Source: Fonticula alba ATCC 38817
Lineage: Eukaryota; Protista; Nucleariida
Direction: 5' to 3' (one strand)
Length of the DNA stretch: 46,661 nt
NCBI GenBank assembly: GCA_000388065.2
Contig: KB932202.1
Translations under genes and position numbers: made by a program
Shown here: in pieces, positions 3,159 to 45,091 of the stretch
How the letters are laid out: each line of letters opens with the position of its first letter
Numbering within the stretch: position 1 is the stretch's first letter
Notes under the pieces: model-generated
Database searches by the model: none
The model's input: the letters and a program-made list of their open reading frames with translations, nothing else
What the model was told of the DNA's origin: nothing

Positions 3159-3642
3159 NNNNNNNNNNNNNNNNNNNNNNNNNNNNNNNNNNNNNNNNNN
3201 NNNNNNNNNNNNNNNNNNNNNNNNNNNNNNNNNNNNNNNNNNNNNNNNNNNNNNNNNNNNNNNNNNNNNNNNNNNNNNNNNNNNNNNNNNNNNNNNNNNN
3301 NNNNNNNNNNNNNNNNNNNNNNNNNNNNNNNNNNNNNNNNNNNNNNNNNNNNNNNNNNNNNNNNNNNNNNNNNNNNNNNNNNNNNNNNNNNNNNNNNNNN
3401 NNNNNNNNNNNNNNNNNNNNNNNNNNNNNNNNNNNNNNNNNNNNNNNNNNNNNNNNNNNNNNNNNNNNNNNNNNNNNNNNNNNNNNNNNNNNNNNNNNNN
3501 NNNNNNNNNNNNNNNNNNNNNNNNNNNNNNNNNNNNNNNNNNNNNNNNNNNNNNNNNNNNNNNNNNNNNNNNNNNNNNNNNNNNNNNNNNNNNNNNNNNN
3601 NNNNNNNNNNNNNNNNNNNNNNNNNNNNNNNNNNNNNNNNNN
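3159..3642. other. Assembly gap (N run); other gaps at 7898-8362, 26836-27091, 28671-28900, 32735-32744, 34330-34339, 41862-42302, 44885-45069
   Basis: N runs, mostly flanked by G/C homopolymers or microsatellites. Confidence 0.99.
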
Positions 3643-7780: not shown

Positions 7781-8362
7781 GCCAGGGCGAGAGGAGACAT
7801 GTGTAACACCCGGCGGAGAAGACGCGCCCCGCCGCACCGCCGGGGGGCGGGAACAGCCGCGCCGCCCGCTCTCCGTGGCCCCTTTTTTGTGCCCCCCNNN
7901 NNNNNNNNNNNNNNNNNNNNNNNNNNNNNNNNNNNNNNNNNNNNNNNNNNNNNNNNNNNNNNNNNNNNNNNNNNNNNNNNNNNNNNNNNNNNNNNNNNNN
8001 NNNNNNNNNNNNNNNNNNNNNNNNNNNNNNNNNNNNNNNNNNNNNNNNNNNNNNNNNNNNNNNNNNNNNNNNNNNNNNNNNNNNNNNNNNNNNNNNNNNN
8101 NNNNNNNNNNNNNNNNNNNNNNNNNNNNNNNNNNNNNNNNNNNNNNNNNNNNNNNNNNNNNNNNNNNNNNNNNNNNNNNNNNNNNNNNNNNNNNNNNNNN
8201 NNNNNNNNNNNNNNNNNNNNNNNNNNNNNNNNNNNNNNNNNNNNNNNNNNNNNNNNNNNNNNNNNNNNNNNNNNNNNNNNNNNNNNNNNNNNNNNNNNNN
8301 NNNNNNNNNNNNNNNNNNNNNNNNNNNNNNNNNNNNNNNNNNNNNNNNNNNNNNNNNNNNNN

Positions 8363-18174: not shown

Positions 18175-20815
18175 TCAAGTCTGGGAGAGGGAGAGGCCGG
18201 AGGCCGACCGCTCGCACAGGGGCTCGAGATAGCCGCCGCTGGAGCCAGGCCGAGGGTGGTGGTCGGCCGTCTGCTGGCTGGAGTGGAGGTGTTGATGATA
18301 GGTGTGGACCGCCGGCGGAGAGGCCGGGGCCGGCCCGCTGCCGCCGGCCCCGGGGCCAAGCTGCTGATGGTGCTCCGGGTGCGTCGGAGTCTGCGGCGAG
18401 GCCACCGATGTCGAGCGCGTGGTCAGCGACGGGGAGGAGGGCGTCGAGGAGAGAGACCGGTTCCGGTAGAAGACCGGCGACGAGGGGTGCGACAGGGGAG
18501 CCCCGGCGACCGAGGAGCCGAGGCCCGGGGTCGGCCCGGCGGGGGCGCCGCCCCGCGACCCGGCATGCGTCGAGATCGACAGGGCCGGCCGGGCCGAGGC
18601 CGACCGCAGCCGCTGGTACGGCTCCGGCGAGACCCCATTCCCGGGGCCGGTGGCCGCCGCGGTGGCCGCCAGCCCCGCCATCGGGCTGCTCGACAGGAAG
18701 GCGCCGGGCTTGCCGGAGACAGCAAGGGCATCGGCCCCGGCCCCGGCCCCAGTGCCCGGGGCCCCAGCCATGCCCGAGTGGTAGAACCCCCGCGTGTTGC
18801 GATGCATGCCGGGGCCGCCGGCCGGCGGGGAAGCCATGTCCAGCGTGGCCGGCGGGGAGGAGGGCCGCGAGTGCTTTGACGAGTACTTGTGCCCCCCCTG
18901 TCCGGGCTGGGGGAAGCCCTGGTGCGTGTTGAAGCCCTGCCGGAGCTGGGCCGACATCTTGCGGAAGGTGCCGATGAAGAACTTCGACAGCGACTCATTG
19001 ACCTCCTTCTGGGACACCTGCACCGGGGGAGCCAAGCGCGAGGGGTCCGTGTGCTTGAGCCACATGCGGGCCGCGTCGAGGGCCGCCTCGGACCCGGCCG
19101 GGTAGCCGGACAAGGCGGTCAGGGTCCACCGGTGCTGCTTGATTTGGGCGATGGTCAGTCGCTGCAGGGGGTTCTTGGTGAGCATCCCCTGGAGGAGGTC
19201 CACCAAATCGGGGTTCAGCCAGTCGGGGTAATGGGGCCTGCGGGGGGGGGGGGGGGGGGGAGTATGGCAGAACGATGGGGTGTGAGTGGCACATCGGCAA
19301 GGTGGGCGAACAGTGGCCAGGAGGGGGGCAGGCACACGCACTCGGTCTTCAGGATGACCTGGTAGAGCTCAAACTCGTTCTCCGCCCAGAAGGGCAGCTT
19401 CCCGGTGGCGAAGGAGTAGAGCGTTACACCGAGGGCCCAGATGTCAATGGCATGCGAGATGGGTGGCGATTCTATGTACGCGCGTGTGTGTGTGCGTGTG
19501 TGTGTGCGTGTGTGTGTGTGTGTGTGGTGGGGAGGGAAACGAGGTCAGCAAAGGGACACGCGAGGGAAAAGAAGCGAGAAAAACCGATGGAGAGAGAGAG
19601 AGAGAGAGGGGGGGGGGGGAACACCCCCACAAGACATGGGCGGGTCACGCACTGTTGCCGGAGGCAGGACCGGTGCCGGCGTCCACGGGCGACGGGCCGC
19701 CATGGCGCGACTGCCCGCCGCCGGCCGTGCCACCTCCAGACCCGCTCAGATGCAGGGAAATGTTCCGCAGGGCTGAGTCGGTGGCCGAGCGCCCGCGCTG
19801 CTGCTGGTACTGCTGCTGGGACACCCGGTCGATGGAGGAGGAGGACCCCCCCCCGGGACCGGAGTCGCTGGTGGACCGCTCGGACATCGCCCCCGCCGGC
19901 CAGGGGACCAGCCTCGAGGACGACTGCCCGGAGGAGGAAAAGAGCCCCGAGAGACGCCGCTGACTGCTGCCGACCGGGTGCTGCGGGACTGGCGTCGCCT
20001 GGGCCGAGCCAGGAGCATAATCGGCTCCCATCGAGAGCCCCGGCCCACCGGCCGAGCCACAGGCCGCCGTGGTCGAGGAGGTGGACGACACCGAGACCGA
20101 GCGCCGGTGCGCGGCGCCGGGGTCCCCATCGACCGGCCGGAAGGCCGGCGGCATTGGCGACTCCTCCGGCGCCAGGTAGGCAGACGAGGTGGAGCTCGAC
20201 CGGGATGACCTCAGGGACTGCGACAAGAGCGACACCGAGGAGGCACGCGACGAGTCACTCAGCGGCCCGGTGTTAAAGCGCCCAGTCACGCCGACCGGAG
20301 ACCCGGGGGCCGTGGACGCCGAGGACGTCGGGCCCGGCGTACCGGGCCCGGCCATCGGGCCCGAGACGGCCACCCCCGTGGCAGCACCATTCCCCGGGGC
20401 CGGGTCGGCATCAGCCCAGGCGTCGGTCGCCAGACGCAAATTCGTCGGCGACAGCCGGCTGAGGCTGGTGTGCGAGGAGTCAGCCGCCAAGGGCGCCTCA
20501 AAGAAGGAGTCCATGGTCGACGTCAGGCAAATGTCCTGGTCGGGACTGGCCGTGTCGTCGGCATGGGCAGGGGCCGTTGTCGGGGCCACCACCGACGATG
20601 ATGCCACCCCGGGCGGCACCGGCGGCCGCTCGGCCGCCGAGGGGAGGATGGTCACACGCGGGCCGGTCGGCAGGTCCGGCGCCGCGTCCACCGACTCGGT
20701 CGACGAGGAGGCAGTGCTGCGAGTGCGCTGGTGTGCCAGAGAGGAGCCGCTGGCGGCGACCACCGAATCCCGACGGAAGAAGCGCCCTGTTGACTCGACA
20801 CCCGAGGAAGAGGAG

Positions 20816-20847
<32 letters not shown>

Positions 20848-22020
20848 GGAGGAGGAGGAGGAGGAGGAGGCCACGGAAGCGGTGGCACTGCCATACCCAA
20901 AGCGGTCGCCGGACCCGCCGGCCGGGCCGGCATCCGCCCTGTCCTGATGGTCATGATGGTGACCATAGTGATGGTGAGGATGGTGATGGTGGTGGTGATG
21001 GTGGTGGACATGGTGCTGGGGGGGTTGCTCCTCGTCCTCGGCATCCTCGCCGGTCGGCGCCTGTCCCGGCACCCGGCCGTCCGTGTCTTCCAGCGGCTCG
21101 AGATGGTCGTGGAGCTGATGGTGGAAGTGCATGTGATGCATATGGTGCAGATCATCCAGCGGAGCCCCGCCATCCTCATCGTCATCATTATCGTCATCCT
21201 CGTCCAGCATGTCGCACAGGTACTCCCCGCCACCGCGGGCCATGGCAGAGGCCGAGCCCCCGCCGCCGGTGGACTCATCCTCCGAGTCCAGGCATAGGGT
21301 CCGCAGCAGCTGCGTCACATCGTCATCATCCACGGCGCAGAGCTCCGGCGCGAAGAAGGCCGGCGTGCCGGCCGTCTTGGCCAGGGCCACCTCCTCCGAT
21401 TCCTCGGACACATGGCTGGCCGTCCCGCCCCCGGTCAGGGGAGAGAGCCCGCCATCTGAGGCGCCGCTTTGCGTCCGCCGGCGGAAGCGCCGCCACAGGC
21501 GTGATGGGGCCCGGTGCTTGCTCGGGTTGACGACCTCGGGCTTCAGGTACGACACGCCGAAGTCCGAGATCTTCACATGCGAGCGGGTACTGTCGAGGAG
21601 CAGATTGGCCGGCTTGATGTCGCGGTGGACAATCCCCTGGTAGTGGACTGGGCGCGGGTGCAGAGCAAGGGCGACGAAAAGGCCGACAGAAGGGGGCACA
21701 TGGAGTCGGGGTCAGGACAGGGGGCGGGGGGGGGGGGGGGGCGCGGCAGAGGGCAAGCCTGGAGGATGGGAAGCCTGACGCACGGAATTCCAAGCCGAGG
21801 AGAATTTCACGGAAATAGTGCCGCACACGATCCTCGCACATGATCGGCCCATCGACGCTCGGGTCTTGGTAGGGGATGGCTCCGCCCTCCATGTATTCGA
21901 GGACTGGGGGGGGGTGTCAGAGGGCGATCGTCATTCACATAGGGGGGGGGGGGATCCCCCGCTGGGGGGGGAGGAAAGGAAAGAGCAGGAGGGAAAGGGG
22001 CGAGAAGAAACAGAACAAAT

Positions 22021-26800: not shown

Positions 26801-29800
26801 GGCGGGTGGGTGTGGGTGTCTCGGCCCCCGGGGGGNNNNNNNNNNNNNNNNNNNNNNNNNNNNNNNNNNNNNNNNNNNNNNNNNNNNNNNNNNNNNNNNN
26901 NNNNNNNNNNNNNNNNNNNNNNNNNNNNNNNNNNNNNNNNNNNNNNNNNNNNNNNNNNNNNNNNNNNNNNNNNNNNNNNNNNNNNNNNNNNNNNNNNNNN
27001 NNNNNNNNNNNNNNNNNNNNNNNNNNNNNNNNNNNNNNNNNNNNNNNNNNNNNNNNNNNNNNNNNNNNNNNNNNNNNNNNNNNNNNNNNNNCGGGGTCAC
27101 CGGGGGGGCGGCCGGGCCGGGGGCCTGTGCGGGCCCCCGACACACCCATGCGTGCGTGAGATTGGCCCTCACCACCCCCTCCCCCCGGGGTACGAGGGGA
27201 GGGGGTGGGGGGAGGCGCCGGTGGGTGTGCCCCCCTCCCCCGCCGCGCCCGCCACTCGAGGTGGTTCGCGAGAGGAGGCACACGCGCACACATATGCATG
27301 CACACATCGACGCGTGTACACCCGACCACCGCGGACGCCCGGGGCTCGGGCTCTGGGTCTTTCTGGCTCTCTCCCGCGTCTCCCCCCCGCTGCCCCCCCC
27401 CTGTGTCGCTTTTGCGCCCGGTGCGGCCCTGGCCGCTGCCTGAGAATAGTGCGCGCCGCCGCGCAGGGCCCGGCCCAAACGCACCCTGATGGGTTTTTGG
27501 ATGGCGGGAGAGAGGTCTCGCGGGCCGGGTAAACACCCCGCGGGCATGCGGCCAGGGGGGGGGGGGGGGCGGGGGACCGGGCCGGGCCGGGCCGGGCCGG
27601 GCGGCAGCGGGCCTCTCCTGCCATGGACGCGCGCCGCCACTGCCTGGCAGCGCCAACCGGGGCCCCGCCCCAGGCCGCCGGGCTGCATGCGAGTGGCCAT
27701 CATGCGTGGCGTTCGCGCGCGCGCGCGCGCGCCCGCACCCACACACACACACACACACACACGTACTCGGAGCAGAGAGGCGCCTCGTAGTCAGTCGGCC
27801 CCTCCACGGAGAAGGGGCTGCGGCTTCGGGTAGTCGGTTACGTGCCACCGTACGGCCCGCCCCCCATTTGGACACTGGATGGCCGGCCTGGCGCGCGACG
27901 CCGGTGGCCGCGGTGGCGGCAGCCGCAACAGAGCGAGGAAGTGTTAATCTCGCCGCGGCCGCCGCCGGTCGGCCGGGGGGGGGGGCTGGTGGGATTGGCC
28001 CCGCGGCGGTCCTCCCCCGTCCCCGCCCGGCTGGTCTGGGGGCCGCCCGCAGGAGCCTTTCATGGAAAGTGACGCTCAGTCGTGCTGGCCCGGCCCGGCG
28101 CCTCCTCCGTCCCCATGGCGAGCGAGAGAGAGCGTGAGGGCCTGCGGCGCGGGGGAGCGCAGCGACAACAGCGGGAAGGGCGAAGAGGGCACCCCGGCGA
28201 CGCGGCCTGGGCGCCGCCGTCGCCGCCGCCGCGCTCGTCCCCCGGAGCGCGGCCGAGTGGCCAAATTAATAGGCCAGGACGCGGGGCGCGCTTGCACAGA
28301 CGATCGGTCCTCCGCTCGGGACGGTGCGTCCCTCCCCCCCCGCAACAGCGCCCCAACAATGCCCGGGCTCGCCCGGACGCGCCGCGGCCGGCCCGATCGA
28401 CAAGGCGGACACAGCCCTCTCGCCCGGCCCCCCGCCCTCCGCGCCCGGCCAACCGGCGCGTTCGATCTCCGCTCCCCAACCGCGATGTGCCCGGTGGTGT
28501 GGCCGGTCGCCCGGGCCGACGCGCCTGTCCTCGGGCCCGGCGGCGCCCGGCCGGGACGAACGGTCGGCCCGGGTGACACCGACCACCGCATTGCACATCC
28601 CCCGCTCTCCCCTGTCTGCGCCCCCGCTGGTTGGAGGCGGCCTCCGCGGATCGTCCCCCCCCCCCCCCCCNNNNNNNNNNNNNNNNNNNNNNNNNNNNNN
28701 NNNNNNNNNNNNNNNNNNNNNNNNNNNNNNNNNNNNNNNNNNNNNNNNNNNNNNNNNNNNNNNNNNNNNNNNNNNNNNNNNNNNNNNNNNNNNNNNNNNN
28801 NNNNNNNNNNNNNNNNNNNNNNNNNNNNNNNNNNNNNNNNNNNNNNNNNNNNNNNNNNNNNNNNNNNNNNNNNNNNNNNNNNNNNNNNNNNNNNNNNNNN
28901 CAGGCGGAGAGGGGCGCTGCCCCGGCGCCGGCGGCGTGCGTGCGTTCTCCCGAACGCGGCGGCGCCGGCGCGTAAAACGCACGCACGTCCCCGCCCCCCC
29001 CCCCCCCCCCCCCTGCGTAAATGGGCCGGGGGGAATGGCAGCACAGCGAGGACGCGCTGGCGCCCCGATCACCCGGGGCACCTGGCGAACCGCCCACGGA
29101 CAGCGGCGCCGCTGGCAACGAGCCCGGGCCCCGGGCCAGGCCGCAAGCGAGGGGGAACACCGGGCGCGGCCCCGGCAGAACGGCCTCGTCCCGCAACACC
29201 ATCACCACCCGCGCCACGCCCAGTGCCATGCACTCTCTGCCCACGGCAACAACAACAACAACAACAACAACAACAAAAACAAAAGACCGCGGCGCGCGCG
29301 GACCGGCCTCGGGGAGCACGCCCCCCGCCACCATATCCCCTTGAGCGAACCGAAAACAATGGGCCCAAAAGGGGATCGTCATGCCCGCACGCCGACACCG
29401 CATCCGGCGCGGGGGCACACACACACACACGCCCCGGCCCCCTTCGCTCAGGGCAGCCAGCCCTCCGCCCGATGAACAGGGAGAGAGGCACGGGGGCGGG
29501 GGACCGGGAGGGGGGGACAGCACGGCGGCGGCCGCCGCAGCCGCCACAACGAGGCCTCCGCACACCCAGCCACCAGGGCGGCGGTACGCCCCCGTCCGCG
29601 CGCGCGCGCGCGCACGCGCCGCGCCCCCCTCCCAGGCCCGCGGGGACGCTGGCAGCAATCCGACCACACGCAGGCCGGGACGGAGCCTGCGGGGGTTGTG
29701 CCGACATAACTCACCAGGAGCCCCCCGAAACTACGGGAAGAATGGTGTTCGGCGAGTCACGCGAACGCGTCATGGGATGGGTCGGATCGGGCTGCCGCAC

Positions 29801-32728: not shown

Positions 32729-32840
32729 CTGCGGNNNNNNNNNNTGGTTCGGGATGTTGGAGAACCCGACAATCGAGTTGAGGGAGATCTTCTGCGGATG
32801 TCGGTGGCGCGCGCGCGGGGGGGGGGGGGGGGGGGGGGGT

Positions 32841-32906: not shown

Positions 32907-34843
32907 CGAGCCGGCGTAGGGGAAGAGGGAAGAGGGAAGGGGGAGGGGGTCAGCTGGGCGAGCCGGCAGGAGGAGGGACGTACACCTGCGGCCGCTGGGG
33001 AGGAGGAAGAGGGAAGCAACCGATCCGAAGGACAAGGAGAGAGCGGGGGGAGAGGATGGAGCGCGGGCGCTCGGGTCAGTGGCGATGCGCGCTCGGGGGG
33101 CGACGTTGCGCGGCGAGAGGCGGCGGAAGACCAAGGCATACTCATTTCCAAAGAGGTGGGAGGCTGTTCGGGGCAAGAAACAGAGGGGGGGGGAGGGGGA
33201 GGAGGGGCAGGGGAGAAGAAGGTTGCCTTGCGGTCTCGGACACGGACACGCCCCGGGGGGCGGCAGTTTTTCAGTGAGCCAACGGGGGGGGGGGCCGGCG
33301 CACGCCGGTTGACGACCGCCAGCCAGCCCGGTCGCAGCTCCCGCATGCAATGCTGGCGCCTCTTCCTGCACATCATGCCACCCCCACCAACACGCTCGGC
33401 GCACCCCTCCACGGTCAAATGCACGTAGACACCCCCCGCACGGGCGCTGGTGGGGTTGCCTTCCTGCAATTGGGCGCGCCAGGAAGAAGGGTGCACACTC
33501 GCCGGGCCGGGTGTCAGCCCCGGGCCCGGCGCGCGCCCGGGGCAGGACCACACAAACGCGCGAGTGCGACCTCGACGGCGCCCGGGGCTCGTGAAGTCAA
33601 ATGGTCGCCGCCGCTGCCGCCGCCGCCGCCCCTGCGAGGCCGGGCTGGCAACATTGTCGCCATGGGGTCTCAAAAATAGGGGCTCGCCTCCTGGGGGCGG
33701 GGGCGCGGGGGCGCGGGGGCGCGGGGGGGCGCGGGGGGGCGCGAGCGCCAAGCACCGGCCCTCCTCGTGCGTCGGGTCCCCTGGTATGTGGCTCTCGGCC
33801 TCTCAGGGGCACTAAAAAAGCTCGGGCAGGCAAGTGTCTGTGTGTATGTGCGTGTCCGGACGGTCGAGCGGCCGTGGGTGTGTGTGATGTGCGCGGGCCG
33901 CCCGGATATCCCCGGCCCCTGGCTGCCGGAGGGGACGCGAGCGCCCCCCTCCCCCGGGAAAGAGCCGGCGCTGGAAGGGCCGAGGGAGCAACGGGGGGGG
34001 GGGGCGGGGCGAGCGCGCCAGAGCCCAGGAATGCGCCCCGGGGGCGGGGCGCATGCACCGAATGCCTCGCCCCCCCCCCCCCCACCCCCCACCCCGCAGC
34101 CCACACTACACCCCCCCCCCCCACACTCCGGTCGCCCGTGCCGGTCAAAGAGCTCTTTCAGCAGCAACGCCCACGCCCGCGGCGGCGGCCGGGGGAAGCG
34201 CCAAGGGGGGGCAGGGCCTCCGTGTCGCCGGGATCGCGGGACGGCGAGCCTTGACCTTCGGGGAGGCGTGTGCCCGACCGGGCGGGCGCCCCCGCCAGAG
34301 CAGGGGGGCCGGCATATGCTCTGTTTGCGNNNNNNNNNNAGGGGGGCCGGCATATGCTCTGTTTGCGGCTGGCACACAGGGCGGGGTGCGCGGTGAGTGG
34401 CTGCGGACGGGTCGGTGTGATCGCCGGCGCGCGGCCCCACCCCCCCCCCCCCCCCCCCCCCCCCCGGCCCCGCCGCTCCCGGAAGGGTCATCCTCCAATG
34501 GAATATACCCTTGGCCAGCCAGACCCATGGACCTAGGTTCCCCCGTCCCCAGCCCCTTGTTATGCTTGCCACCTGCGGCCGAGGTTGGTCTCACCGCGGT
34601 GGTGTGCGTGGGAAGATGTTCCCCTCTCATCGGCCTGCGCCCAGAGGGGCGGGGGGAGGGGAGGACCACCCCCCCCCCCCCCTTCCCGACGGGGGACCCT
34701 CCCCACGCGCCCGGCCAGAAACGCGGACCCTTTTTTGTCATGATATATGCTTTTTTTCCGGCCAATTTCCCCGGATTTTCACTCTGGCGCCCCGGGGGCT
34801 GGAACAACGGGCAGGGAAGGCAAAAATCCCAAGGTCCATTCCT

Positions 34844-36469: not shown

Positions 36470-37441
36470 AGCCCACACAGCGAGGGACGAGGGAAGGGAA
36501 GCAAGACACACACACACACACACACACACACGCGCAGAGGTCGAGCGAGTCAGGCGGGGGAGGGGAGGGCGGGCGCGGAAAGCGGCAAAAGGGGTGCGGC
36601 GTTATTTCCCGGGCCGCGTCCGTGCGGCGCGCCCTCGCCCCGGGGCCCCATCAATGCCGCTCTGGTAGATCGCGCCAACGGCGGCAGGCCGATCGGCTGT
36701 GTGTCCCTGTGCGATGTCCCTCCGCTCGAGCGCAAGCATGTGCCCCCCCTCCCCAGCCGCCAATGCTTGGGTGAATGCCCTGACCCCGAGGCATCCTCGG
36801 CTGCGGTCCCCGCCCACATTGGCCGATGCTCCGGCACCCCTGTCTCTTCCATGCCCCCTCCCCCCTCCCCCCCTGGTGGACATTCGTGTGTTGCTGCCTG
36901 CTCGCGCGTTGTCAGATCCCGACCGAGGATCACGCCTCGGCGCTTCACTCGGACGACAGATCACGCGGACACCCTAGATGACACCTCGCCCCTCGGCCCG
37001 CCCCCACTCCCCCCTGGCTCCCCAGCGAATAGATACGTCTTGTGCCCAATGCCGCCGCCCCGGCCAGGACCTCCAGCGGTTGTTCCTCGTTGCTCGGCGA
37101 CGGGCCACGGCGGTTGCCAGCCGATCGGCTTTTGATCGTGGACCGCTTTCTCCAGGCCCGTCCTCGCGTCTCCCCCCCCCTCCCCCCCCACCTCGCCGAG
37201 GTGCCCGGGCCGGTGATCTTCACGAGCGCGACCAGAAAAGGGCCCGCACAAGGCTGGGCCCGGTGTTGTCCCTCCAGCAGCCCCCCTGTTTCCTGGCTCT
37301 TGCCACCCCCTCCCCCCTCCCCCCTCCCCCCTAACACCCTCGCCTGCCCCTGCCCCTGCCCCTGCCCCTGCCCTCTGTTCTGTCTGTCCGTCTCTTTTTT
37401 GTCCCCGCTCGCTTCCCCTGTCCTCCTGCCCTCGTGTCACC

Positions 37442-38183
37442 ATGGAGTTCGTTCGCCAGCGCGTCTATGAGCCGGTGCGCAAGGCTCTCAGCTCGGGGAT
37501 CACCCCTCACGGCCTGGCCCTGGCAACGGCCTTCGCCTTCTCCGGCGGCATGGTACGCCCGCCGACCGGGTCCCCCCTTTTGCTGTCCTCCTCGTTCCCC
37601 CCACGCTGGGCCCCTTTCCCACACCGCCTCCTGACGGCCCCCTGTCGCGAGCAGTTCCCCGTGCCCGGCACCACGACCTTCGTGTGTCTCTTCTTCACGC
37701 TGCTGTTCAAGCTGAATGGCGCCATCGTCCAGGGTGCGTCCTTTGTGCGGCTTTGCCGGCACCCCGCCCCCCCCCCCGCCTTGCCCCATCTGGTCCGGTG
37801 TTGCTGACATCGCGCCGCCGGCCCCCGCCGCGCGGTCCCGTGCATGGCCGACCACGCGCCCAGTCGTCAACCTCCTCCTGACCCCGGTGGGCTTCATGAT
37901 GCTGCCGGTGTTCATCAATCTCGGGGGGATGCTGATCCCGGCGCCGGCCGGCTCCGACGGCGGGGTCCCCTCCTCCGGGCAGCTGCTGGCCCTTGTGTGG
38001 AAGGCCCTCAGCAGCCTGGACCCGGGGCCACTGAAGCCGGTGTTCGGGGCCTTCGCCGGGGCCGTGGCCGCTTGGTTCCTGGCGGTTCCCTTCATGACGG
38101 CCTGCGTGTATTTGCTCACGCGGCCGGTGTTCGGGTACTTCCTGCGCGACCGGGCCGGTGGCACCAAGCGCAAGCACCTATGA
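37442..38183 (+). CDS. DUF2062-like multi-pass membrane protein (short form, ~169 aa, ends ...GGTKRKHL*)
   Basis: Model join(37442..37552,37655..37733,37864..38183). Pattern GITPHGLALATAFAFSGGMFPVPGTTT...LNGAIVQVVNLLLTP...FINLG matches the remembered DUF2062 signature (TP..LA...A.G...G.FP..G..T...N....Q..N.L..P). Has 3-4 hydrophobic segments. Confidence 0.75.
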
Positions 38184-38187
38184 CTAG
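38181..38187 (+). other. Candidate programmed stop-codon readthrough signal TGA-CTA-G
   Basis: Sequence reads CAC CTA TGA CTA GCT CGG. UGA-CUAG is the established high-efficiency readthrough context, and the frame stays open for 310 codons downstream. Confidence 0.65.
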
Positions 38188-39116
38188 CTCGGCTGGAGCG
38201 TCTCCTTCGGCGGCACTGGCGCCGGGTTCACCGGCCCTTGGTGGCCTGGCTGCCGGGGCCTTTGCGGCGTCGGGCCGTCGGCTGGGCTCCGCTCGGGGGC
38301 AGCCCCCTGTTCGAGGGGGGCCCCGGGGCCGGCACGCCGGCCGAAGAGCTGGACCTGGGGGCTCTCGGTGGCTCTGAGTACCCGGCCTTCTCGTCGGCGG
38401 CCCTGCCGCGCGCGACGGAGCATGCCCCCGGACCCCCGGGCGCACCTCTCCTCGGCCAGCAGTACTACCACCAGCACCAGCACCAGCACCAGCAACAGTA
38501 CCAGATGGCCCCGCTCCAGCATCCTCACTCCGGTCCTCGAGCGTCCGGAGACTCCCTCCAGCCGGCCTTCAGCTGTGACCTTTCGGTTGGGGCCTCCTCC
38601 GCGTCGACGCTGGCCCTGGCCGCCGGCGAGCCGGGATCTGGCGGCCCCAAGCCCGGCGCCTGGCCACCTGGCGCCACGCCCACCGCACATACCTACAACA
38701 CCCCGTGGAGCTCACCGCCGGTGGGGGCCAATCCCCCTGTGGCCGGGTCCCTGGCAGCCGGCCGGCCATTGGCCACGATGCAGGACACGCCGGCCATCTC
38801 CAGCGTGGACCTGTCCTCGTCCGGCCTGCCGACAGGGGTCCTGCTGCCGGGGTTCGGCGGTGCCACGCCCGCCCCGCCGGCCGATCCCTCGGGCAAAGCG
38901 TCCCTCCTCTCGCGGCTGCCCCCCTCCTTGGGCCAGGCCGCCCTTCCTCTTCACGCCAATGGGTCCCTCCTCCCGGGCACTTCCTCGGTATTGCCGACGG
39001 CCTCCCTAGATCTCCACCACCACCATCATCACTCCCAGTCGCAAGCGAAGGCGCCACAGGCCGCCTCCTCGGATGCCCCGGTCTCGCCGGTCTCCTTCTC
39101 GCCTGTCGTCCTCTAG
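38184..39116 (+). CDS. In-frame 310-codon extension directly after the DUF2062-like stop (putative readthrough isoform tail)
   Basis: Same frame as the upstream CDS and open to TAG 39114-39116. Composition is coding-like (YYHQHQHQHQQQYQ, HHHHHH, Pro/Ala/Ser-rich), as in other exons here. It has no polypyrimidine acceptor or ATG at its 5' end. Confidence 0.6.
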   Translation, partial: LARLERLLRRHWRRVHRPLVAWLPGPLRRRAVGWAPLGGSPLFEGGPGAGTPAEELDLGALGGSEYPAFSSAALPRATEHAPGPPGAPLLGQQYYHQHQHQHQQQYQMAPLQHPHSGPRASGDSLQPAFSCDLSVGASSASTLALAAGEPGSGGPKPGAWPPGATPTAHTYNTPWSSPPVGANPPVAGSLAAGRPLATMQDTPAISSVDLSSSGLPTGVLLPGFGGATPAPPADPSGKASLLSRLPPSLGQAALPLHANGSLLPGTSSVLPTASLDLHHHHHHSQSQAKAPQAASSDAPVSPVSFSPVVL

Positions 39117-39831
39117 GCGCGCGCGCGCGTGCGCCCCTCCGCCCCCCCCCCCCCCTACATACCCGCGCTCTGCGCCGCCCCAGAATAAACACCCTCCTAA
39201 AGGCAGACGCCGGCCACGCAGCGCATGTCCCGAGACAGGGGAGGACCGACGGGGGCCGGTGGCGAGGGACCGAAGGCGAAGCCAGCCCAGGGGGCGCCGG
39301 GGCCGGGGACACTGTGCCAGACGCCGTGGTCATTGGGACCCCCTCCCCGGAGGCAGCCGCCAAGAGGACAGTGCATCAAGGTGCGCGGGACAACACCGCC
39401 AGGGCGGCGACACTGGCGGCCGGACACCGGGGGCAGGCGGAAGCAGCACCGGATGGAGCACGCGCCGGCGTGCACCCCCCCCCCCGCCCCCCGGCCCGGA
39501 GCGGCCCCTCCCTCGTCCGGCGCCGGTGCCCGAGAAGGCCCATGCTTCCGTTGGCAGTCGGGCGATCGGCCCCCAGATCGCGACCTCGCGGCTCGGCCGC
39601 CGGCATCCTCCGGCCGCCGCCCCTCCGGGGGACAAAGAGGGCTGGCGCGGACACAGGAGGGGCCGCTCCGGGCGCTTCGCCGGCTGCGGCTGCGGGCACA
39701 GTAGCATTCATTGCCTTGCCTCGCCCCTGCCCTTTCCCTCGGCCTCCCCTTCCCTCCCCCCCCCCGCCCCCTCCCTGGCCCCTTGGCCTGCCTCTCCCGT
39801 CCCTCGCGTCCTGCCCCCGCCCCCCTCACCC

Positions 39832-42800
39832 ATGGGCGACACCATGGCGAGGCCGTACGTGCCGCAGGAGTCCCGGCCGATGGACGCGGCCCAGGTCCTG
39901 CCCTTGCGCTCGCTCACCCTGCACCTGGTGGGGTTCGATCTGTCCCGCGCGGCGTGGCTGCCGCCCGATTCGTCGGCCGTGTCTGGGTCTCACATGCAGC
40001 CGGGTGCCCGCGTGGCCGGGGTCCCGGTGGGCGATCGCACGCAGCTGGACCTGGAGGCTACGCGCCACCTGGCCGGGCTGTCGTTCCTCCTGGCGGAGGT
40101 CCGCCTGCTGGAGCTGACGGCTCTTAGCCAGCTTGGCGGGGTGTTCATCCGCCAGGGGACGCGTTTGCACCTGGCGGGCCGTGCGGGGGTCCGCGTGCGC
40201 GTCGAATGCCGGGCACTGGTTCCGCTGTGTGCCGACGTGCCTGCGGCCGACCTCCGTCCCTGGTGCGCGGTGGTTTCCTCCACGGCCGTGTATGTGGAAG
40301 CCCCCCTGGGGGGCCTGCCCAGTGGCTTCGGCGCTGGGCCCCAGGGCCCGGCGGCCGCCGGCGCTCCCCGGGCCCCGGTGAGCCTGGCTCGGCAGGACTC
40401 CCTCTGGCTGGATGCCGGGGCGTGGCTTGGGCGGCTGTGTCCCGGGGTCTTCCACGGCCAGGGAGGCGCCCTGGCCGCGGTGACCGGCTACTGCTCGGGC
40501 TCCCTGGCCGGGGTCCCGGGCAGTCCGGCCCCCGGGCCGGTTCTCGTGTCCGGCCCGGCCGGCTGTGGCAAGACGTCACTCTGTGTTTGGGCCGGCTCCG
40601 GGGCCGGGGCCAAGGGGGCCGAGCCCGAGGGCGATGCCTGTGGCAGCGGCTCCCACGCGGCGGCCCCCCGGCGGGTGATGCTTCTCAGCCCGTGGGACAG
40701 CCCGGATCGACTGGTTGGCCAACTCACCCGGTTGGCCGGGTGGCTGGCGGCCGTCGGGCCCGGCAGTTCGGCCGTCCGGGCGACGCTGGTCCTGGATAAC
40801 TTGGATGGCTCGGACTTGGCACCGGCCCCCGGGGCACGGTCGCCGCTGCCGGCCATTCTCTTTGGCTTTGTCAACCGCCTGTTGACCACGCATGGGCCGG
40901 CCCTGCAGGTGCTTGGGGCTTGTCGCGACCCGGCCCGGGTGCCGGCTTCGCTGGCCCGTCTTTTCGAGGTGCGTCTCTCTCTCTCTCTCTCTCTCTCTAT
41001 GCTGGGCGAGGGCGGGCACCAGAGGGGGGGGGCGGGGGGCGGGGGGCGGCGGATGGCCCGCTGGGGCCTGGCTCAGCCTCCCGCCCGCCCCTGCGGGCAT
41101 GTCCCCCGTTGGCTTGGAGGGGCCATGTGCTAACATGGCGCCCGTGCGTTAGACCTCGGTGGCGGTGCCTCCCCTGACGGATGCCGCGCGCCGGGCCATC
41201 GGTGTGGCGCTCGCCCAGTGGGCCCCCCTACGCGGGGTGTGTCTCGAAGTGCGGCAGCCGGCGGATCCGGCCGCCATCGGGGCCTTTGTGGCGGCCGAGC
41301 TCCGGTCACATGCGGTGGCCGACGTGCTGGCGGTCTTCCGCCAGGCGTTGCTGCACCATGACGGGGCCCTGCCCCCGGCGGCCGGCGCCTACCAGGTTGC
41401 GTCGCTGTCGGCGGCTGGCCGGGCCGGGAGCTCGTCCTCCACCCGGGAGCTCTTCACCCTGGTCGAGCCTGGCACCGCCAGCTGGGCCGATCTCGGTGGC
41501 GTGGACCTGCTGCGCCAGCGCCTCGAGGAGGCCATTGTCCAGCCGATGCTCCACGCCCCGGGCCAGGGGTCCCTCTCACCCCTGGCGGCACTGGCCTACT
41601 CCAGCGGCATGGGGGTCGTTCTGTGCGTAAGCCGGCCATCTTCGCTTGCCCTGGGCATTTTGCGTCGCTCGGTATTCACCTCCTTCTTTGCCATGGGCCT
41701 TTTGGCTGGGGTTTGCCCCCTTCCCCCGCGCATATACACGTACATATGTGTGCATACATGTGCGTATGCACGCATGTATGCACGCATGTATGCACGCACG
41801 TATGCACGCATGTATGCACGCACGTCTGCACGCACGTCTGCACGCATGTATGCACGCATGTNNNNNNNNNNNNNNNNNNNNNNNNNNNNNNNNNNNNNNN
41901 NNNNNNNNNNNNNNNNNNNNNNNNNNNNNNNNNNNNNNNNNNNNNNNNNNNNNNNNNNNNNNNNNNNNNNNNNNNNNNNNNNNNNNNNNNNNNNNNNNNN
42001 NNNNNNNNNNNNNNNNNNNNNNNNNNNNNNNNNNNNNNNNNNNNNNNNNNNNNNNNNNNNNNNNNNNNNNNNNNNNNNNNNNNNNNNNNNNNNNNNNNNN
42101 NNNNNNNNNNNNNNNNNNNNNNNNNNNNNNNNNNNNNNNNNNNNNNNNNNNNNNNNNNNNNNNNNNNNNNNNNNNNNNNNNNNNNNNNNNNNNNNNNNNN
42201 NNNNNNNNNNNNNNNNNNNNNNNNNNNNNNNNNNNNNNNNNNNNNNNNNNNNNNNNNNNNNNNNNNNNNNNNNNNNNNNNNNNNNNNNNNNNNNNNNNNN
42301 NNCCCCCCCCCCCCCTCTCTCTCTCTCTCTTAGACACGGCCCCCCCGGAACGGGAAAGACGCATCTCGCGCGAGCGGCAGCCGCCGCCGCCGGGGCCAGC
42401 ATCATCTCCTTGTCGGCTGCGTCGATGGCGCGTGCGCATGTCGGCGAGTTGGAGGCCTCAGTCCGGCAGGTCCTGGCGGCCGCGCGCGAGGCAGCACCCT
42501 GCATCGTCCTGGTGGATGAGATTGACGCCCTGGTCGGGCGGGCCGATGCCGGTGCGGAGGACGCGGGAGCCCCCGGGGACGAGCTGCTCCTGGCGTCGCT
42601 GCTGGCCGAGCTGGATCAGTTGGCTGATGTCGCGGCCTCGGTGCGCATCATCGCCACCACCAACCACCTTCCTTGGCTGGACGCGCGGCTCCTCCGACCC
42701 GGGCGCCTGGATGTCCAACTGGAGGTCCCCCTACCGGACCATGCTGCGCGAATGGAGATCATCGGTGCGAGGCCTGCTTCCCCCTGTCGCTCCTCCCTTG

Positions 42801-43543
42801 ACCCTTTTCGCCTCTTTCCCGTCCCCATCTTCCCCCCTTTCCGCCCATCCGCCCACTAACACACACACACACACACAGAGCTTCTCCTGCGAAAGATTCC
42901 CCTCGCTGCCGGCCTTGACTTGTCGCTCGAGTTCCTTTGGAGCCTGGCCGACCAATGTGAGGGCTTCTCCGGGGCGGAGCTGGTCAACCTCACCCGGCAG
43001 GCGACCAATGCGGCCCTCTCGCGGCTTCTCTCCCAAGAGCAAGACACCCCCGATGGTGGTGCGGATGAGGAGGTACGCATGGCTTCCCTGGAGCCCGTTC
43101 ATCTGTCCCTCCGCAGCGCATTCACCCGAGCATGCTCCTCTGTTGCTCCGGCCAACCCCCCTGGCCGGCAGATTGCCATCCATGCCGCCGACATTGAGGC
43201 CGCACTCTCTTCGCTGGTGGCCGCACGCCCCGGCCCCCCTGGCCACTGCTGGCCCGCCGAGCCGGCGTACGACGAGTCCCCCTCGACCGACGACACCCCC
43301 ACGGGCGCCTCGTCAGCCGGCGACACCCCGGCCGTCCCGGAGCAGCCGTTTGTCTTCCGGCCACTGGCTTCGGCTGAGCCCACTGGCGCCGGGGCATCCA
43401 TGCAGCCGGCCCACGGCGGGACTGCCAATGGGCCGCCGGTCGCTCTCCCGTCGGTTGGCCCGGCCGCCGATCGGCGCGCCAGTGACACCGACACAACTCC
43501 ACCCCCGGCGGCTCCCTTCGTGTTCAAGCCTCTCGGACGGTAG
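39832..43543 (+). CDS. Tandem AAA+ ATPase of the CDC48/AFG2 group (SPATA5L1/AFG2B-like)
   Basis: Model join(39832..40968,41153..41622,42334..42764,42879..43072,43172..43543); intron 43073-43171 is in frame and inferred. D1: SGPAGCGKT and LVLDNLD. D2: WADLGG, VVLHGPPGTGKT, HVGELE, IVLVDEID, IIATTN..LDARLLRPGRLD, EGFSGAEL. Confidence 0.85.
41762..41861 (+). repeat. Intronic 12-nt tandem repeat (TGCACGCATGTA and variants) running into an assembly gap
   Basis: About 8 imperfect copies directly before the N run at 41862. Confidence 0.85.
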
Positions 43544-44770: not shown

Positions 44771-45091
44771 ATGCGCCATTGGTGCATGTGCCTTGGAAAG
44801 GTTGAATACATTCTATGAGAAAAAAAAAGGTAGAAGCAAGAAAAGAGGGGGAGGGCAGTCGAGTCGGCGGGGGCGGGGGCGGGGNNNNNNNNNNNNNNNN
44901 NNNNNNNNNNNNNNNNNNNNNNNNNNNNNNNNNNNNNNNNNNNNNNNNNNNNNNNNNNNNNNNNNNNNNNNNNNNNNNNNNNNNNNNNNNNNNNNNNNNN
45001 NNNNNNNNNNNNNNNNNNNNNNNNNNNNNNNNNNNNNNNNNNNNNNNNNNNNNNNNNNNNNNNNNNNNNGGGGGGGGACAGAGAGTGGTGT

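What the first reader, a model, noticed from the sequence alone, without database searches (positions are those of the whole stretch)
38178..39116. Candidate programmed stop-codon readthrough (TGA-CTA-G) adding a 310-aa tail to a DUF2062-like membrane protein
Seen: the spliced CDS ends CAC CTA TGA and is followed at once by CTA GCT CGG. The same frame stays open for 310 sense codons to TAG 39114-39116, with coding-like content (LARLERLLRRHWRRVHRPL..., YYHQHQHQHQQQYQ, His6). None of the other ten modelled stops has this context (TGA-TTC, TGA-GCC, TAG-GGG, TAG-CGG, TGA-CGC, TGA-GGG, TGA-AGG, TAG-CCC, TAA-ATG, TGA-GGG). Established: UGA-CUA(G) drives efficient readthrough in animals (e.g. AQP4, MDH1, LDHB) and fungi. 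Inference: two isoforms of ~169 and ~480 aa come from one mRNA. I know of no described readthrough in this family or lineage, and the extension is unusually long. Long ORFs arise easily in DNA this GC-rich, so the exact motif at the junction is the key evidence.
Basis: partly seen in the sequence, partly recalled or inferred. Interest (0 to 1): 0.85.

Follow-up and report, generated by a model that had tools for sequence, protein, structure and literature searches.

The report
Likely stop-codon readthrough in Fonticula
A small membrane-protein gene of the amoeba Fonticula alba stops at a TGA in the leakiest known context (TGA-CTAG), and 310 more codons that look like real coding sequence follow in the same frame and mRNA, so ribosomes probably sometimes read through to make a second, much longer protein, though translation itself has not been shown.

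Summary
The organism is Fonticula alba and the gene is H696_01486. A three-exon CDS of 169 aa ends CTA-TGA-CTA-G at 38181-38187. The same frame then stays open for 310 codons, to the TAG at 39114-39116.

- **Transcript:** contigs from four RNA runs splice both real introns. They then run unbroken from 37863 to about 39150, and the TGA is kept.
- **Public model:** the 470-aa model skips the stop with a 30-nt "intron" (38158-38187). No RNA contig shows it, and its donor (GTGGCA) does not fit the GTRCG donor of all six RNA-supported introns, which are 99-717 nt long.
- **Coding signal:** the extension looks like coding sequence in exactly this frame, along its whole length. The flanking non-coding DNA does not.
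- **Family:** homologues normally end where the TGA sits. None of them carries the tail.
- **Context:** in-frame CTA-G occurred 0 times in 4,290 coding-like codons.
- **Other recoding:** no SECIS element was found.

Programmed UGA-CUAG readthrough is the best explanation, at about 0.6. Translation past the stop is inferred, not shown. Rivals are a relic tail behind a recent nonsense change, a rarely spliced mini-intron, and a separate downstream cistron.

The scan's first readers noted other in-frame TGA cases elsewhere in this genome. I did not test those.

The parts
37380..37441 (+). 5' UTR (minimum extent; the stretch just upstream is a repeat that the read tool masked)
   Evidence: RNA contigs of X1, X2 and X3 start at 37380
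37442..37552 (+). Exon 1 CDS (ATG ... GGC ATG)
   Evidence: Joint 37552/37655 in RNA contigs, GT..AG; translation
37553..37654 (+). Intron 1, 102 nt, donor GTACGC
37655..37733 (+). Exon 2 CDS
37734..37863 (+). Intron 2, 130 nt, donor GTGCGT
37864..38180 (+). Exon 3 CDS up to the last sense codon (CTA). It completes the 169-aa DUF2062-like four-helix membrane domain and ends ...TKRKHL
   Evidence: homologues align to residues 1-165; AlphaFold model of residues 1-157 has pLDDT 92
38181..38183 (+). TGA stop of the short form; proposed leaky stop
   Evidence: Present in the genome and in the RNA contigs of four runs with 0 differences
38184..38187 (+). CTAG immediately 3' of the stop: the readthrough-promoting tetranucleotide
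   Evidence: motif function from Loughran 2014 (PMC4132726) and Stiebler 2014 (PMC4207609); in-frame CTA-G seen 0 times in 4,290 coding-like codons
38184..39113 (+). 310-codon in-frame extension. It starts with a basic helix of about 35 aa; the rest is a P/A/L/S/G-rich, His/Gln-rich tail predicted to be disordered
   Evidence: Open frame; coding periodicity chi2 33, p 7e-8; coding-model score +0.05 bits per codon, best of six frames in 11 of 11 windows; structure prediction
39114..39116 (+). TAG stop of the long form
   Evidence: it is also the annotated stop of H696_01486
39117..39189 (+). Short 3' UTR of the long form: a (GC)n run, a C-run where all RNA contigs end (39144-39150), then AATAAA at 39184-39189
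   Evidence: no coding periodicity downstream of the TAG
38158..38187 (+). 30-nt GT..AG 'intron' of the public gene model, which removes the TGA. Judged an annotation device, not a real intron
   Evidence: Deduced from P0001 (...RDRA|ARLERLL...); absent from the contigs of four RNA runs; donor GTGGCA against GTRCG in 6 of 6 real introns, which are 99-717 nt long

Best explanation
One mRNA of Fonticula alba gene H696_01486 encodes two proteins. Most ribosomes terminate at UGA 38181-38183 and make a 169-aa DUF2062-like membrane protein of normal family length, with a short basic C-terminus (...TKRKHL). A fraction decode that UGA with a near-cognate tRNA, because UGA followed by CUAG is a poor termination signal. 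They continue for 310 codons to UAG 39114-39116 and make a protein of about 480 aa. Its tail begins with a basic helix and is otherwise disordered. Shown: the gene structure, the retained UGA in spliced RNA, the context, and the coding signature of the tail. Inferred: that ribosomes actually read through, how often they do, and any function of the long form, for example burying the C-terminal KxKxx-like end of the short form.
For: - RNA contigs from four runs (two samples) splice introns 1 and 2, then run without gap or mismatch from 37863 to 39144-39150. The UGA and the whole extension are therefore on the mature mRNA.
- The context is exactly TGA-CTAG. UGA-CUAG gave efficient readthrough in four mammalian genes and deleting it nearly abolished readthrough (PMC4132726). 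UGA-CU(A) is sufficient in the fungus Ustilago maydis and in human cells (PMC4207609).
- The context is very rare here. CTA is used 1.9 times per 1000 codons, in-frame CTA-G occurred 0 times in 4,290 codons, and TGACTAG is unique in the window.
- The extension has codon-position periodicity in this frame: GC1/2/3 are .745/.619/.823, chi2 33, p 7e-8. Introns and both flanking intergenic regions have none (p 0.16-0.61). None of 300 open random sequences reached it.
- A position-specific model trained on four verified coding pieces of the window scores the extension +0.05 bits per codon. Verified CDS score +0.035 to +0.23. All frames of five non-coding controls score -0.20 or lower. The read-through frame is the best of six in 11 of 11 sliding windows, starting right after the stop and before the first in-frame ATG.
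- The antisense frame is rejected (A3 .17, G2 .43).
- The ORF ends about 35 nt before the point where the contigs end and about 70 nt before AATAAA. The extension therefore fills what would otherwise be a 3' UTR of at least 970 nt.
- In 81 homologues the tail after the conserved Pro151 has a median of 16 aa (quartiles 13-22, maximum 100). The short form has 18, so the TGA sits at the family's usual end.
- Neighbouring genes use TGA as an ordinary stop, in TGA-G or TGA-A contexts.
- There is no SECIS.
Against: - There is no direct evidence of translation past the stop: no Ribo-seq, proteomics or reporter data.
- The RNA evidence is assembled contigs, which drop minor isoforms.
- The tail has no homologue anywhere. 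Purifying selection on it, and conservation of the TGA-CTAG, therefore cannot be tested.
- The closest relative ends TGA-TAA with no tail.
- The coding signature shows that the tail is or recently was coding. It does not show that it is translated now.
- No unusual RNA structure follows the stop (z -0.96).
- The motif's activity has never been tested in Fonticula or any nucleariid.
Confidence: 0.6

Rival explanations
1. Relic tail. The ancestral Fonticula gene encoded a protein of about 480 aa with a long low-complexity tail. A recent nonsense change created the TGA, so the extension is now an untranslated 3' UTR that still looks coding.
For: The coding signature would persist for a long time after inactivation. 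An open frame of this length is easy at this composition (7%). Other in-frame TGA cases were noted by first readers in this genome, and a follow-up on one judged it an ordinary nonsense change (unchecked here). Some homologues have tails of up to 100 aa.
Against: A random nonsense change would have to land within the roughly 15 residues where the family normally ends. It would also have to sit directly in front of CTA-G, which was seen 0 times in 4,290 in-frame positions. The joint probability is well below 1e-3 per case.
Confidence: 0.15
2. Alternative splicing of a 30-nt mini-intron (38158-38187), as in the public model. The retained form gives 169 aa and the spliced form gives 470 aa.
For: GT..AG boundaries exist and removal keeps the frame. 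NCBI/UniRef carry this 470-aa model. CTAG would then serve as a TAG acceptor. Contigs can hide minor isoforms.
Against: No contig in four RNA runs shows the joint, although the same contigs splice both real introns. No public assembly other than the genome record encodes the exact 470-aa protein. The donor GTGGCA differs at +4 and +5 from the GTRCG found in 6 of 6 RNA-supported introns. Those introns are 99-717 nt long with a branch-like CTRAC 15-25 nt from the AG, whereas here the only candidate A lies 4 nt from the AG. No consensus donor exists anywhere in exon 3.
Confidence: 0.08
3. A separate downstream cistron or independent initiation. The tail region is translated on its own, from an internal or non-AUG start or from a transcript with its own start site, and its frame match with the upstream CDS is a coincidence.
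For: The coding signature alone does not say how ribosomes get there. An in-frame ATG exists at 38505. Contigs cannot exclude a nested transcript.
Against: The coding signature begins directly after the TGA: 38184-38504 has chi2 29.7, and the first windows already score as coding. A predicted helix starts at residue 2 of the extension. The same-frame coincidence (1 in 3) and the TGA-CTAG coincidence (about 3e-4 per position) would go unexplained.
Confidence: 0.07
4. Chance open frame in a GC-rich 3' UTR with a chance TGA-CTAG. Only the 169-aa protein exists.
For: The window is 60-78% GC and long ORFs occur in all six frames. 7% of composition-matched random sequences are open for 310 codons.
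Against: The frame-specific periodicity and coding-model scores match verified CDS and are absent from all non-coding controls. 0 of 300 open simulations and 0 of 39 control windows reached them.
Confidence: 0.05
5. UGA is recoded as selenocysteine or another specific amino acid.
For: UGA is the Sec codon. First readers noted in-frame TGAs at conserved Cys positions elsewhere in this genome (unchecked).
Against: No SECIS or any Rfam element was found in 37300-39500, even at E up to 10. There is no tRNA gene in the window. The codon lies in a non-conserved basic tail, not at a catalytic or Cys position. Neighbouring genes end at TGA.
Confidence: 0.02

Closest known systems
Mammalian UGA-CUAG readthrough genes (OPRL1, OPRK1, AQP4, MAPK10; also MDH1) - Loughran et al. 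2014, PMC4132726
   Same: The same seven nucleotides, UGA followed by CUAG. The stop is retained in the mRNA and an in-frame extension carries a coding signature. No downstream RNA structure is required.
   Different: The mammalian cases are proven by reporters and by motif conservation across vertebrates, and the one extension length I read there (MAPK10) is 13 aa. Here nothing is proven experimentally, no orthologues exist, and the extension is 310 aa, about twice the length of the main protein.
Fungal and animal UGA-CU(A) readthrough that adds peroxisomal targeting signals (Ustilago maydis glycolytic enzymes; human MDH1/LDHB) - Stiebler et al. 2014, PMC4207609
   Same: The same short context, shown to work in a fungus. 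Fonticula belongs to the sister lineage of fungi (Holomycota; my own knowledge). The logic is the same: two isoforms with different C-termini from one mRNA.
   Different: Those extensions are short and end in a PTS1. This tail ends ...SPVVL with no PTS1, is long and disordered, and would hide a C-terminal signal (KxKxx-like) rather than add one.
Drosophila long readthrough extensions such as kelch and headcase (my own knowledge; Jungreis et al. 2011; see also PMC5100048)
   Same: UGA readthrough adds hundreds of residues, so the long form is a substantially different protein.
   Different: The insect cases are supported by cross-species codon-substitution signatures and by antibodies. Their contexts differ and are often helped by RNA structure.
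DUF2062 (PF09835) membrane proteins, e.g. Treponema pallidum TP_0480
   Same: The 169-aa form has the family's length and helix pattern. 692 homologues were found. The structure model matches the TP_0480 model (TM 0.59).
   Different: The Pfam score is below the family threshold (14.2 against 27.4 bits). It belongs to a eukaryotic branch (Amoebidium, Balamuthia, Rhizamoeba). No family member has a comparable tail, and the family's function is unknown.

Membership tests
Programmed stop-codon readthrough, UGA-CUAG class | UGA stop immediately followed by CUA(G) | tested here: met
   CTA TGA CTA GCT at 38178-38189; unique in the window
Programmed stop-codon readthrough, UGA-CUAG class | The stop codon is present in the mature, spliced mRNA and the mRNA covers the whole extension | tested here: met
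   Contigs of four RNA runs are spliced at both introns and continuous from 37863 to 39144-39150 with 0 differences. They are contigs only, so minor isoforms are not excluded
Programmed stop-codon readthrough, UGA-CUAG class | The in-frame downstream region bears a protein-coding signature | tested here: met
   Single-genome signature only: periodicity p 7e-8; the coding model gives the best of six frames in 11 of 11 windows, at the level of verified CDS
Programmed stop-codon readthrough, UGA-CUAG class | Evolutionary conservation of the stop context and of the extension (PhyloCSF-type evidence) | tested here: inconclusive
   No homologue of the tail exists among 5.8 billion or 1.8 billion proteins. 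The nearest relative, at 43% identity, ends TGA-TAA without a tail. No close species is available
Programmed stop-codon readthrough, UGA-CUAG class | Translation beyond the stop demonstrated (Ribo-seq, MS, reporter, antibody) | not testable with these tools
   No such data for F. alba could be reached; raw reads were unavailable
DUF2062 (PF09835) | Score at or above the Pfam gathering threshold | tested here: not met
   14.2 bits against a cut-off of 27.4, E 0.043, covering profile positions 10-135 of 147
DUF2062 (PF09835) | Homology to recognised members, with the same fold and length | tested here: met
   692 phmmer hits, 54 of them at E<=1e-10. They include a JGI protein named 'DUF2062 family' and a relative with a weak PF09835 hit. 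The model (pLDDT 92) matches the TP_0480 model at TM 0.59
Selenoprotein gene | SECIS element in the 3' part of the mRNA | tested here: not met
   No SECIS or other relevant Rfam hit in 37300-39500 at E up to 10
Spliceosomal intron (the annotated 38158-38187) | Junction observed in RNA | tested here: not met
   Absent from the contigs of X1-X4, which do show the neighbouring junctions
Spliceosomal intron (the annotated 38158-38187) | Donor, branch and length typical of the organism's introns | tested here: not met
   GTGGCA against GTRCG in 6 of 6 introns; 30 nt against 99-717 nt; no branch-like site at the usual distance

The most novel reading that the evidence does not exclude
Fonticula alba may use UGA readthrough as a regular way of making long and short isoforms, with the public annotation hiding such cases under artificial mini-introns. 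In this gene the switch would decide whether a DUF2062 membrane protein exposes a C-terminal KxKxx-type ER-retrieval end (short form) or buries it under a 310-aa disordered tail (long form). That would be dual localisation by masking a signal rather than adding one. It would also push the UGA-CUAG mechanism back to the base of Holomycota. First readers flagged other in-frame TGA cases in this genome (one TGA-C followed by 577 open codons, two at conserved Cys positions); those are untested leads.
Probability: 0.15. Interest if true: 0.7.

Novelty: new member of a known kind. Interest (0 to 1): 0.55.

Why it matters
If confirmed, this would be the first readthrough gene described in nucleariids, the sister lineage of fungi (to my knowledge; my literature searches here did not cover this). 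It would show that the seven-nucleotide UGA-CUAG signal of animals and fungi also works there. Its extension is twice as long as the main protein, which is unusual. It also exposes a practical problem. The public protein (470 aa, "DUF2062 domain-containing protein") rests on a 30-nt intron that the RNA does not support. It therefore lacks nine or ten real residues (GGTKRKHL, the stop position and Leu; the Ala at the junction is ambiguous) and hides the stop codon. Similar mini-introns elsewhere in this annotation may hide further recoding or nonsense events. The function of the DUF2062 family remains unknown.

Tried and rejected
- **Raw RNA-seq reads.** Runs X12 and X13 ("organism B") held essentially nothing of the locus. 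Only assembled contigs of the 2012 runs were usable, so minor splice forms and readthrough-independent 3' ends could not be measured.
- **Homology search with the tail alone.** It found only the gene's own annotated protein. The exhaustive search with the 470-aa model matched only residues 1 to about 165.
- **The nearest relative's contig** (L002) ends 17 nt after a TGA-TAA double stop, so there is no conserved context.
- **Rfam scan** for SECIS or any readthrough-stimulating element found nothing.
- **Folding of the 120 nt after the stop** gave an ordinary result for this composition (z -0.96).
- **tRNA scan of the window** found none.
- **Antisense-gene explanation of the periodicity.** The codon-aligned minus frame is open from 38187 to about 39005, but its A3 of .17 and G2 of .43 do not fit coding, and its model score is -0.44. 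Rejected.
- **GC3-GC2 periodicity alone as a coding classifier.** It also passes a shadow ORF opposite the kinase gene. I therefore replaced it with a base-specific position model with leave-one-out controls.
- **Search for a better alternative intron across the stop.** There is no GTRCG donor in exon 3.
- **Fold searches for a function of the domain.** The only match was another uncharacterised DUF2062 model; nothing in the PDB.
- **Structure prediction of the tail.** Two helices at the start, the rest of low confidence.
- **KxKxx as a family feature.** Dilysine-like ends occur in only 2 of 81 homologues, so the ER-retrieval idea has no family-level support.
Full report
**What is there.** The window is from Fonticula alba. 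The extension ORF matches NCBI protein H696_01486 (470 aa, P0001) at 100% identity, on contig KB932202.1 of GCA_000388065.2.

Exons 37442-37552, 37655-37733 and 37864-38183 join into a 510-nt CDS that encodes 169 aa. The sequence at the stop is CAC CTA TGA CTA GCT. The same frame then stays open for 310 codons, to the TAG at 39114-39116.

**Transcript evidence.** Four public RNA runs from 2012 (X1-X4, two samples) hold the locus as assembled contigs.

- In three runs a single contig begins at 37380 and skips 37553-37654 and 37734-37863 (both GT..AG). It then runs without any mismatch or gap from 37863 to 39090-39150. The X4 contig covers 37863-39144.
- The TGA is therefore real and is retained in spliced mRNA, and the mRNA covers the whole extension.
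- All contigs stop in a C-run at 39144-39150. An AATAAA lies at 39184-39189. The long ORF thus ends about 35-90 nt before the 3' end. If the TGA were the only stop used, the 3' UTR would be at least 970 nt long.
- The raw-read runs on offer belong to another organism and held nothing. Minor isoforms therefore cannot be excluded.

**The public model.** P0001 reads ...FLRDRA|ARLERLL... This means the annotators removed 38158-38187 as a 30-nt GT..AG intron that contains the TGA.

- No RNA contig shows this joint.
- No public assembly other than the genome record encodes the exact 470-aa protein.
- The six RNA-supported introns in the window are 99-717 nt long. All six have the donor GT[AG]CG and a CTRAC-like branch 15-25 nt from the acceptor.
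- The mini-intron has the donor GTGGCA. Exon 3 contains no consensus donor anywhere.

I read the mini-intron as a gene-caller's device to join two coding-like regions across a stop.

**Is the extension coding?** An open frame alone is weak evidence. 7% of dinucleotide-matched random sequences are open for 310 codons, and 3-6% of inter-stop runs in the window are that long. The composition signal is much stronger.

- **Periodicity.** GC at codon positions 1, 2 and 3 is .745.619 and .823. This is the same order as in the upstream CDS (.639.473.911), with chi2 33 and p 7e-8. Introns and both flanking intergenic regions show none (p 0.16-0.61). The largest chi2 among 300 open simulations was 11.4. 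The signal is already present in 38184-38504, before the first in-frame ATG (chi2 29.7).
- **A caveat I had to handle.** GC periodicity also passed a shadow ORF opposite a kinase gene. I therefore trained a base-specific position model on four verified coding pieces: this gene, septin, kinase and AAA exon 1.
- **Model scores.** Leave-one-out scores of those pieces are +0.035 to +0.23 bits per codon in the true frame only. The extension scores +0.05 in the read-through frame and at most -0.27 in the other five frames.
- **Along the extension.** In 11 of 11 sliding 300-nt windows the read-through frame is the best of six. By contrast, 39 windows from five non-coding controls never exceed -0.08, even taking the best of six frames.
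- **Antisense.** The codon-aligned antisense frame is rejected (A3 .17, G2 .43).

The tail is, or was until recently, protein-coding in frame with the upstream CDS.

**Where the family ends.**

- The 470-aa model found 692 homologues. All of them match only residues 1 to about 165, and most are 150-250 aa long.
- Named members come from Amoebidium, Balamuthia and Rhizamoeba, plus a JGI protein named 'DUF2062 family'.
- In an 82-sequence alignment, the tail after the conserved Pro151 has a median of 16 aa (quartiles 13-22, maximum 100). The short Fonticula form has 18 and the long form would have 329. The TGA therefore sits at the family's usual C-terminus.
- The nearest relative (43% identity) ends TGA-TAA with no tail.
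- The Pfam hit to DUF2062 is below threshold. However, the domain models confidently (pLDDT 92), and its only structural match is another DUF2062 model, TP_0480 (TM 0.59). The family's function is unknown.
- The tail is predicted as a helix at its residues 2-21 and another at 25-34, and is otherwise of low confidence. Its first 40 residues carry 10 Arg/Lys. The rest is rich in P, A, L, S and G, with His/Gln runs.

**How the stop is passed.**

- UGA-CUAG is the context shared by the four efficiently read-through mammalian genes; deleting CUAG nearly abolishes readthrough there (PMC4132726).
- UGA-CU(A) is sufficient in Ustilago maydis and in human cells (PMC4207609).
- In this window CTA is a rare codon (1.9 per 1000). 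In-frame CTA-G was seen 0 times in 4,290 coding-like codons. CTAG occurs 16 times in 46.6 kb, and TGACTAG occurs once.
- The stops of six neighbouring genes are TGA-G, TGA-A, TAG-C, TAA-A, TGA-G and TGA-G. TGA is therefore a normal stop here, and none of the neighbours has this context.
- No SECIS was found. No tRNA gene lies in the window. No unusual structure follows the stop.

**Weighing the explanations.**

- **Chance ORF (0.05).** It fails on the coding signature.
- **Random nonsense change in a formerly long ORF (0.15).** The change would have to land both at the family's usual end and directly before CTA-G. That is jointly very improbable, even allowing for some tens of nonsense alleles per genome.
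- **Mini-intron (0.08).** It fails on RNA, on the donor and on length, but contigs cannot exclude a rare form.
- **Separate cistron (0.07).** It leaves the frame match, the coding signal from the first codon and the context unexplained.
- **Selenocysteine (0.02).** It lacks a SECIS and a rationale.
- **Programmed readthrough (0.6).** It explains all the observations, but it rests on inference for the key step, which is translation past the stop.

**Novelty.** The mechanism and the motif are known. The lineage, the family and the length of the tail relative to the main protein would be new. The public annotation of this gene is probably wrong at the junction. First readers noted other in-frame TGA cases in this genome. 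I did not test them, and they are leads only. The idea that the short form's KRKHL end is an ER-retrieval signal masked by readthrough (note s1-066230) has no family-level support, because only 2 of 81 homologues have a dilysine-like end.

Noticed in passing
38158-38187: The public model H696_01486 (470 aa) contains a 30-nt intron that no RNA contig supports and that exists only to skip the in-frame TGA. The deposited protein therefore lacks GGTKRKHL, the stop position and the following Leu. Other very short introns in this annotation may hide stops in the same way.
   Followed up: yes
37553, 37734, 40969, 41623, 42765, 43073 (donor sites): All six RNA-supported introns in the window start GT[AG]CG, which is an unusually rigid extended donor. 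They have CTRAC-like branch sites and are 99-717 nt long.
   Followed up: partly
38166-38183: The short form ends TKRKHL, with Lys at -3 and -5 (KxKxx-like). This was already noted by the scan (s1-066230). Only 2 of 81 homologues have a dilysine-like end, so it is not a family feature.
   Followed up: partly
20180-20944 (+) opposite 19648-21711 (-): A 255-codon shadow ORF lies antisense to a protein-kinase gene and shows coding-type GC periodicity (.73/.57/.84). GC3-GC2 alone is not a safe coding test in this genome.
   Followed up: partly
3159-3642, 7898-8362, 26836-27091, 28671-28900, 32735-32744, 34330-34339, 41862-42302, 44885-45069: Assembly gaps (N runs). They explain the apparent low-GC bins of the composition profile. 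One lies inside the 717-nt intron of the AAA gene.
   Followed up: yes
37302-37379 and 39117-39160: C/T-rich hexamer repeats (CCCCTC and CCCCTG units) lie just upstream of the RNA contig start. A (GC)n run and a C-run lie right after the TAG, and all RNA contigs break there, so the true transcript ends are not defined by the contigs.
   Followed up: no
runs X5-X24: The raw-read RNA runs offered under the 'same species label' belong to a different coded organism. The two I tried held essentially nothing of this locus, so they are not usable for Fonticula.
   Followed up: partly
39832-43543 (+): The downstream neighbour is an AAA-ATPase gene (867 aa in the public model) with at least four RNA-supported introns. 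Its RNA contig depth is lower than that of the DUF2062 gene.
   Followed up: no
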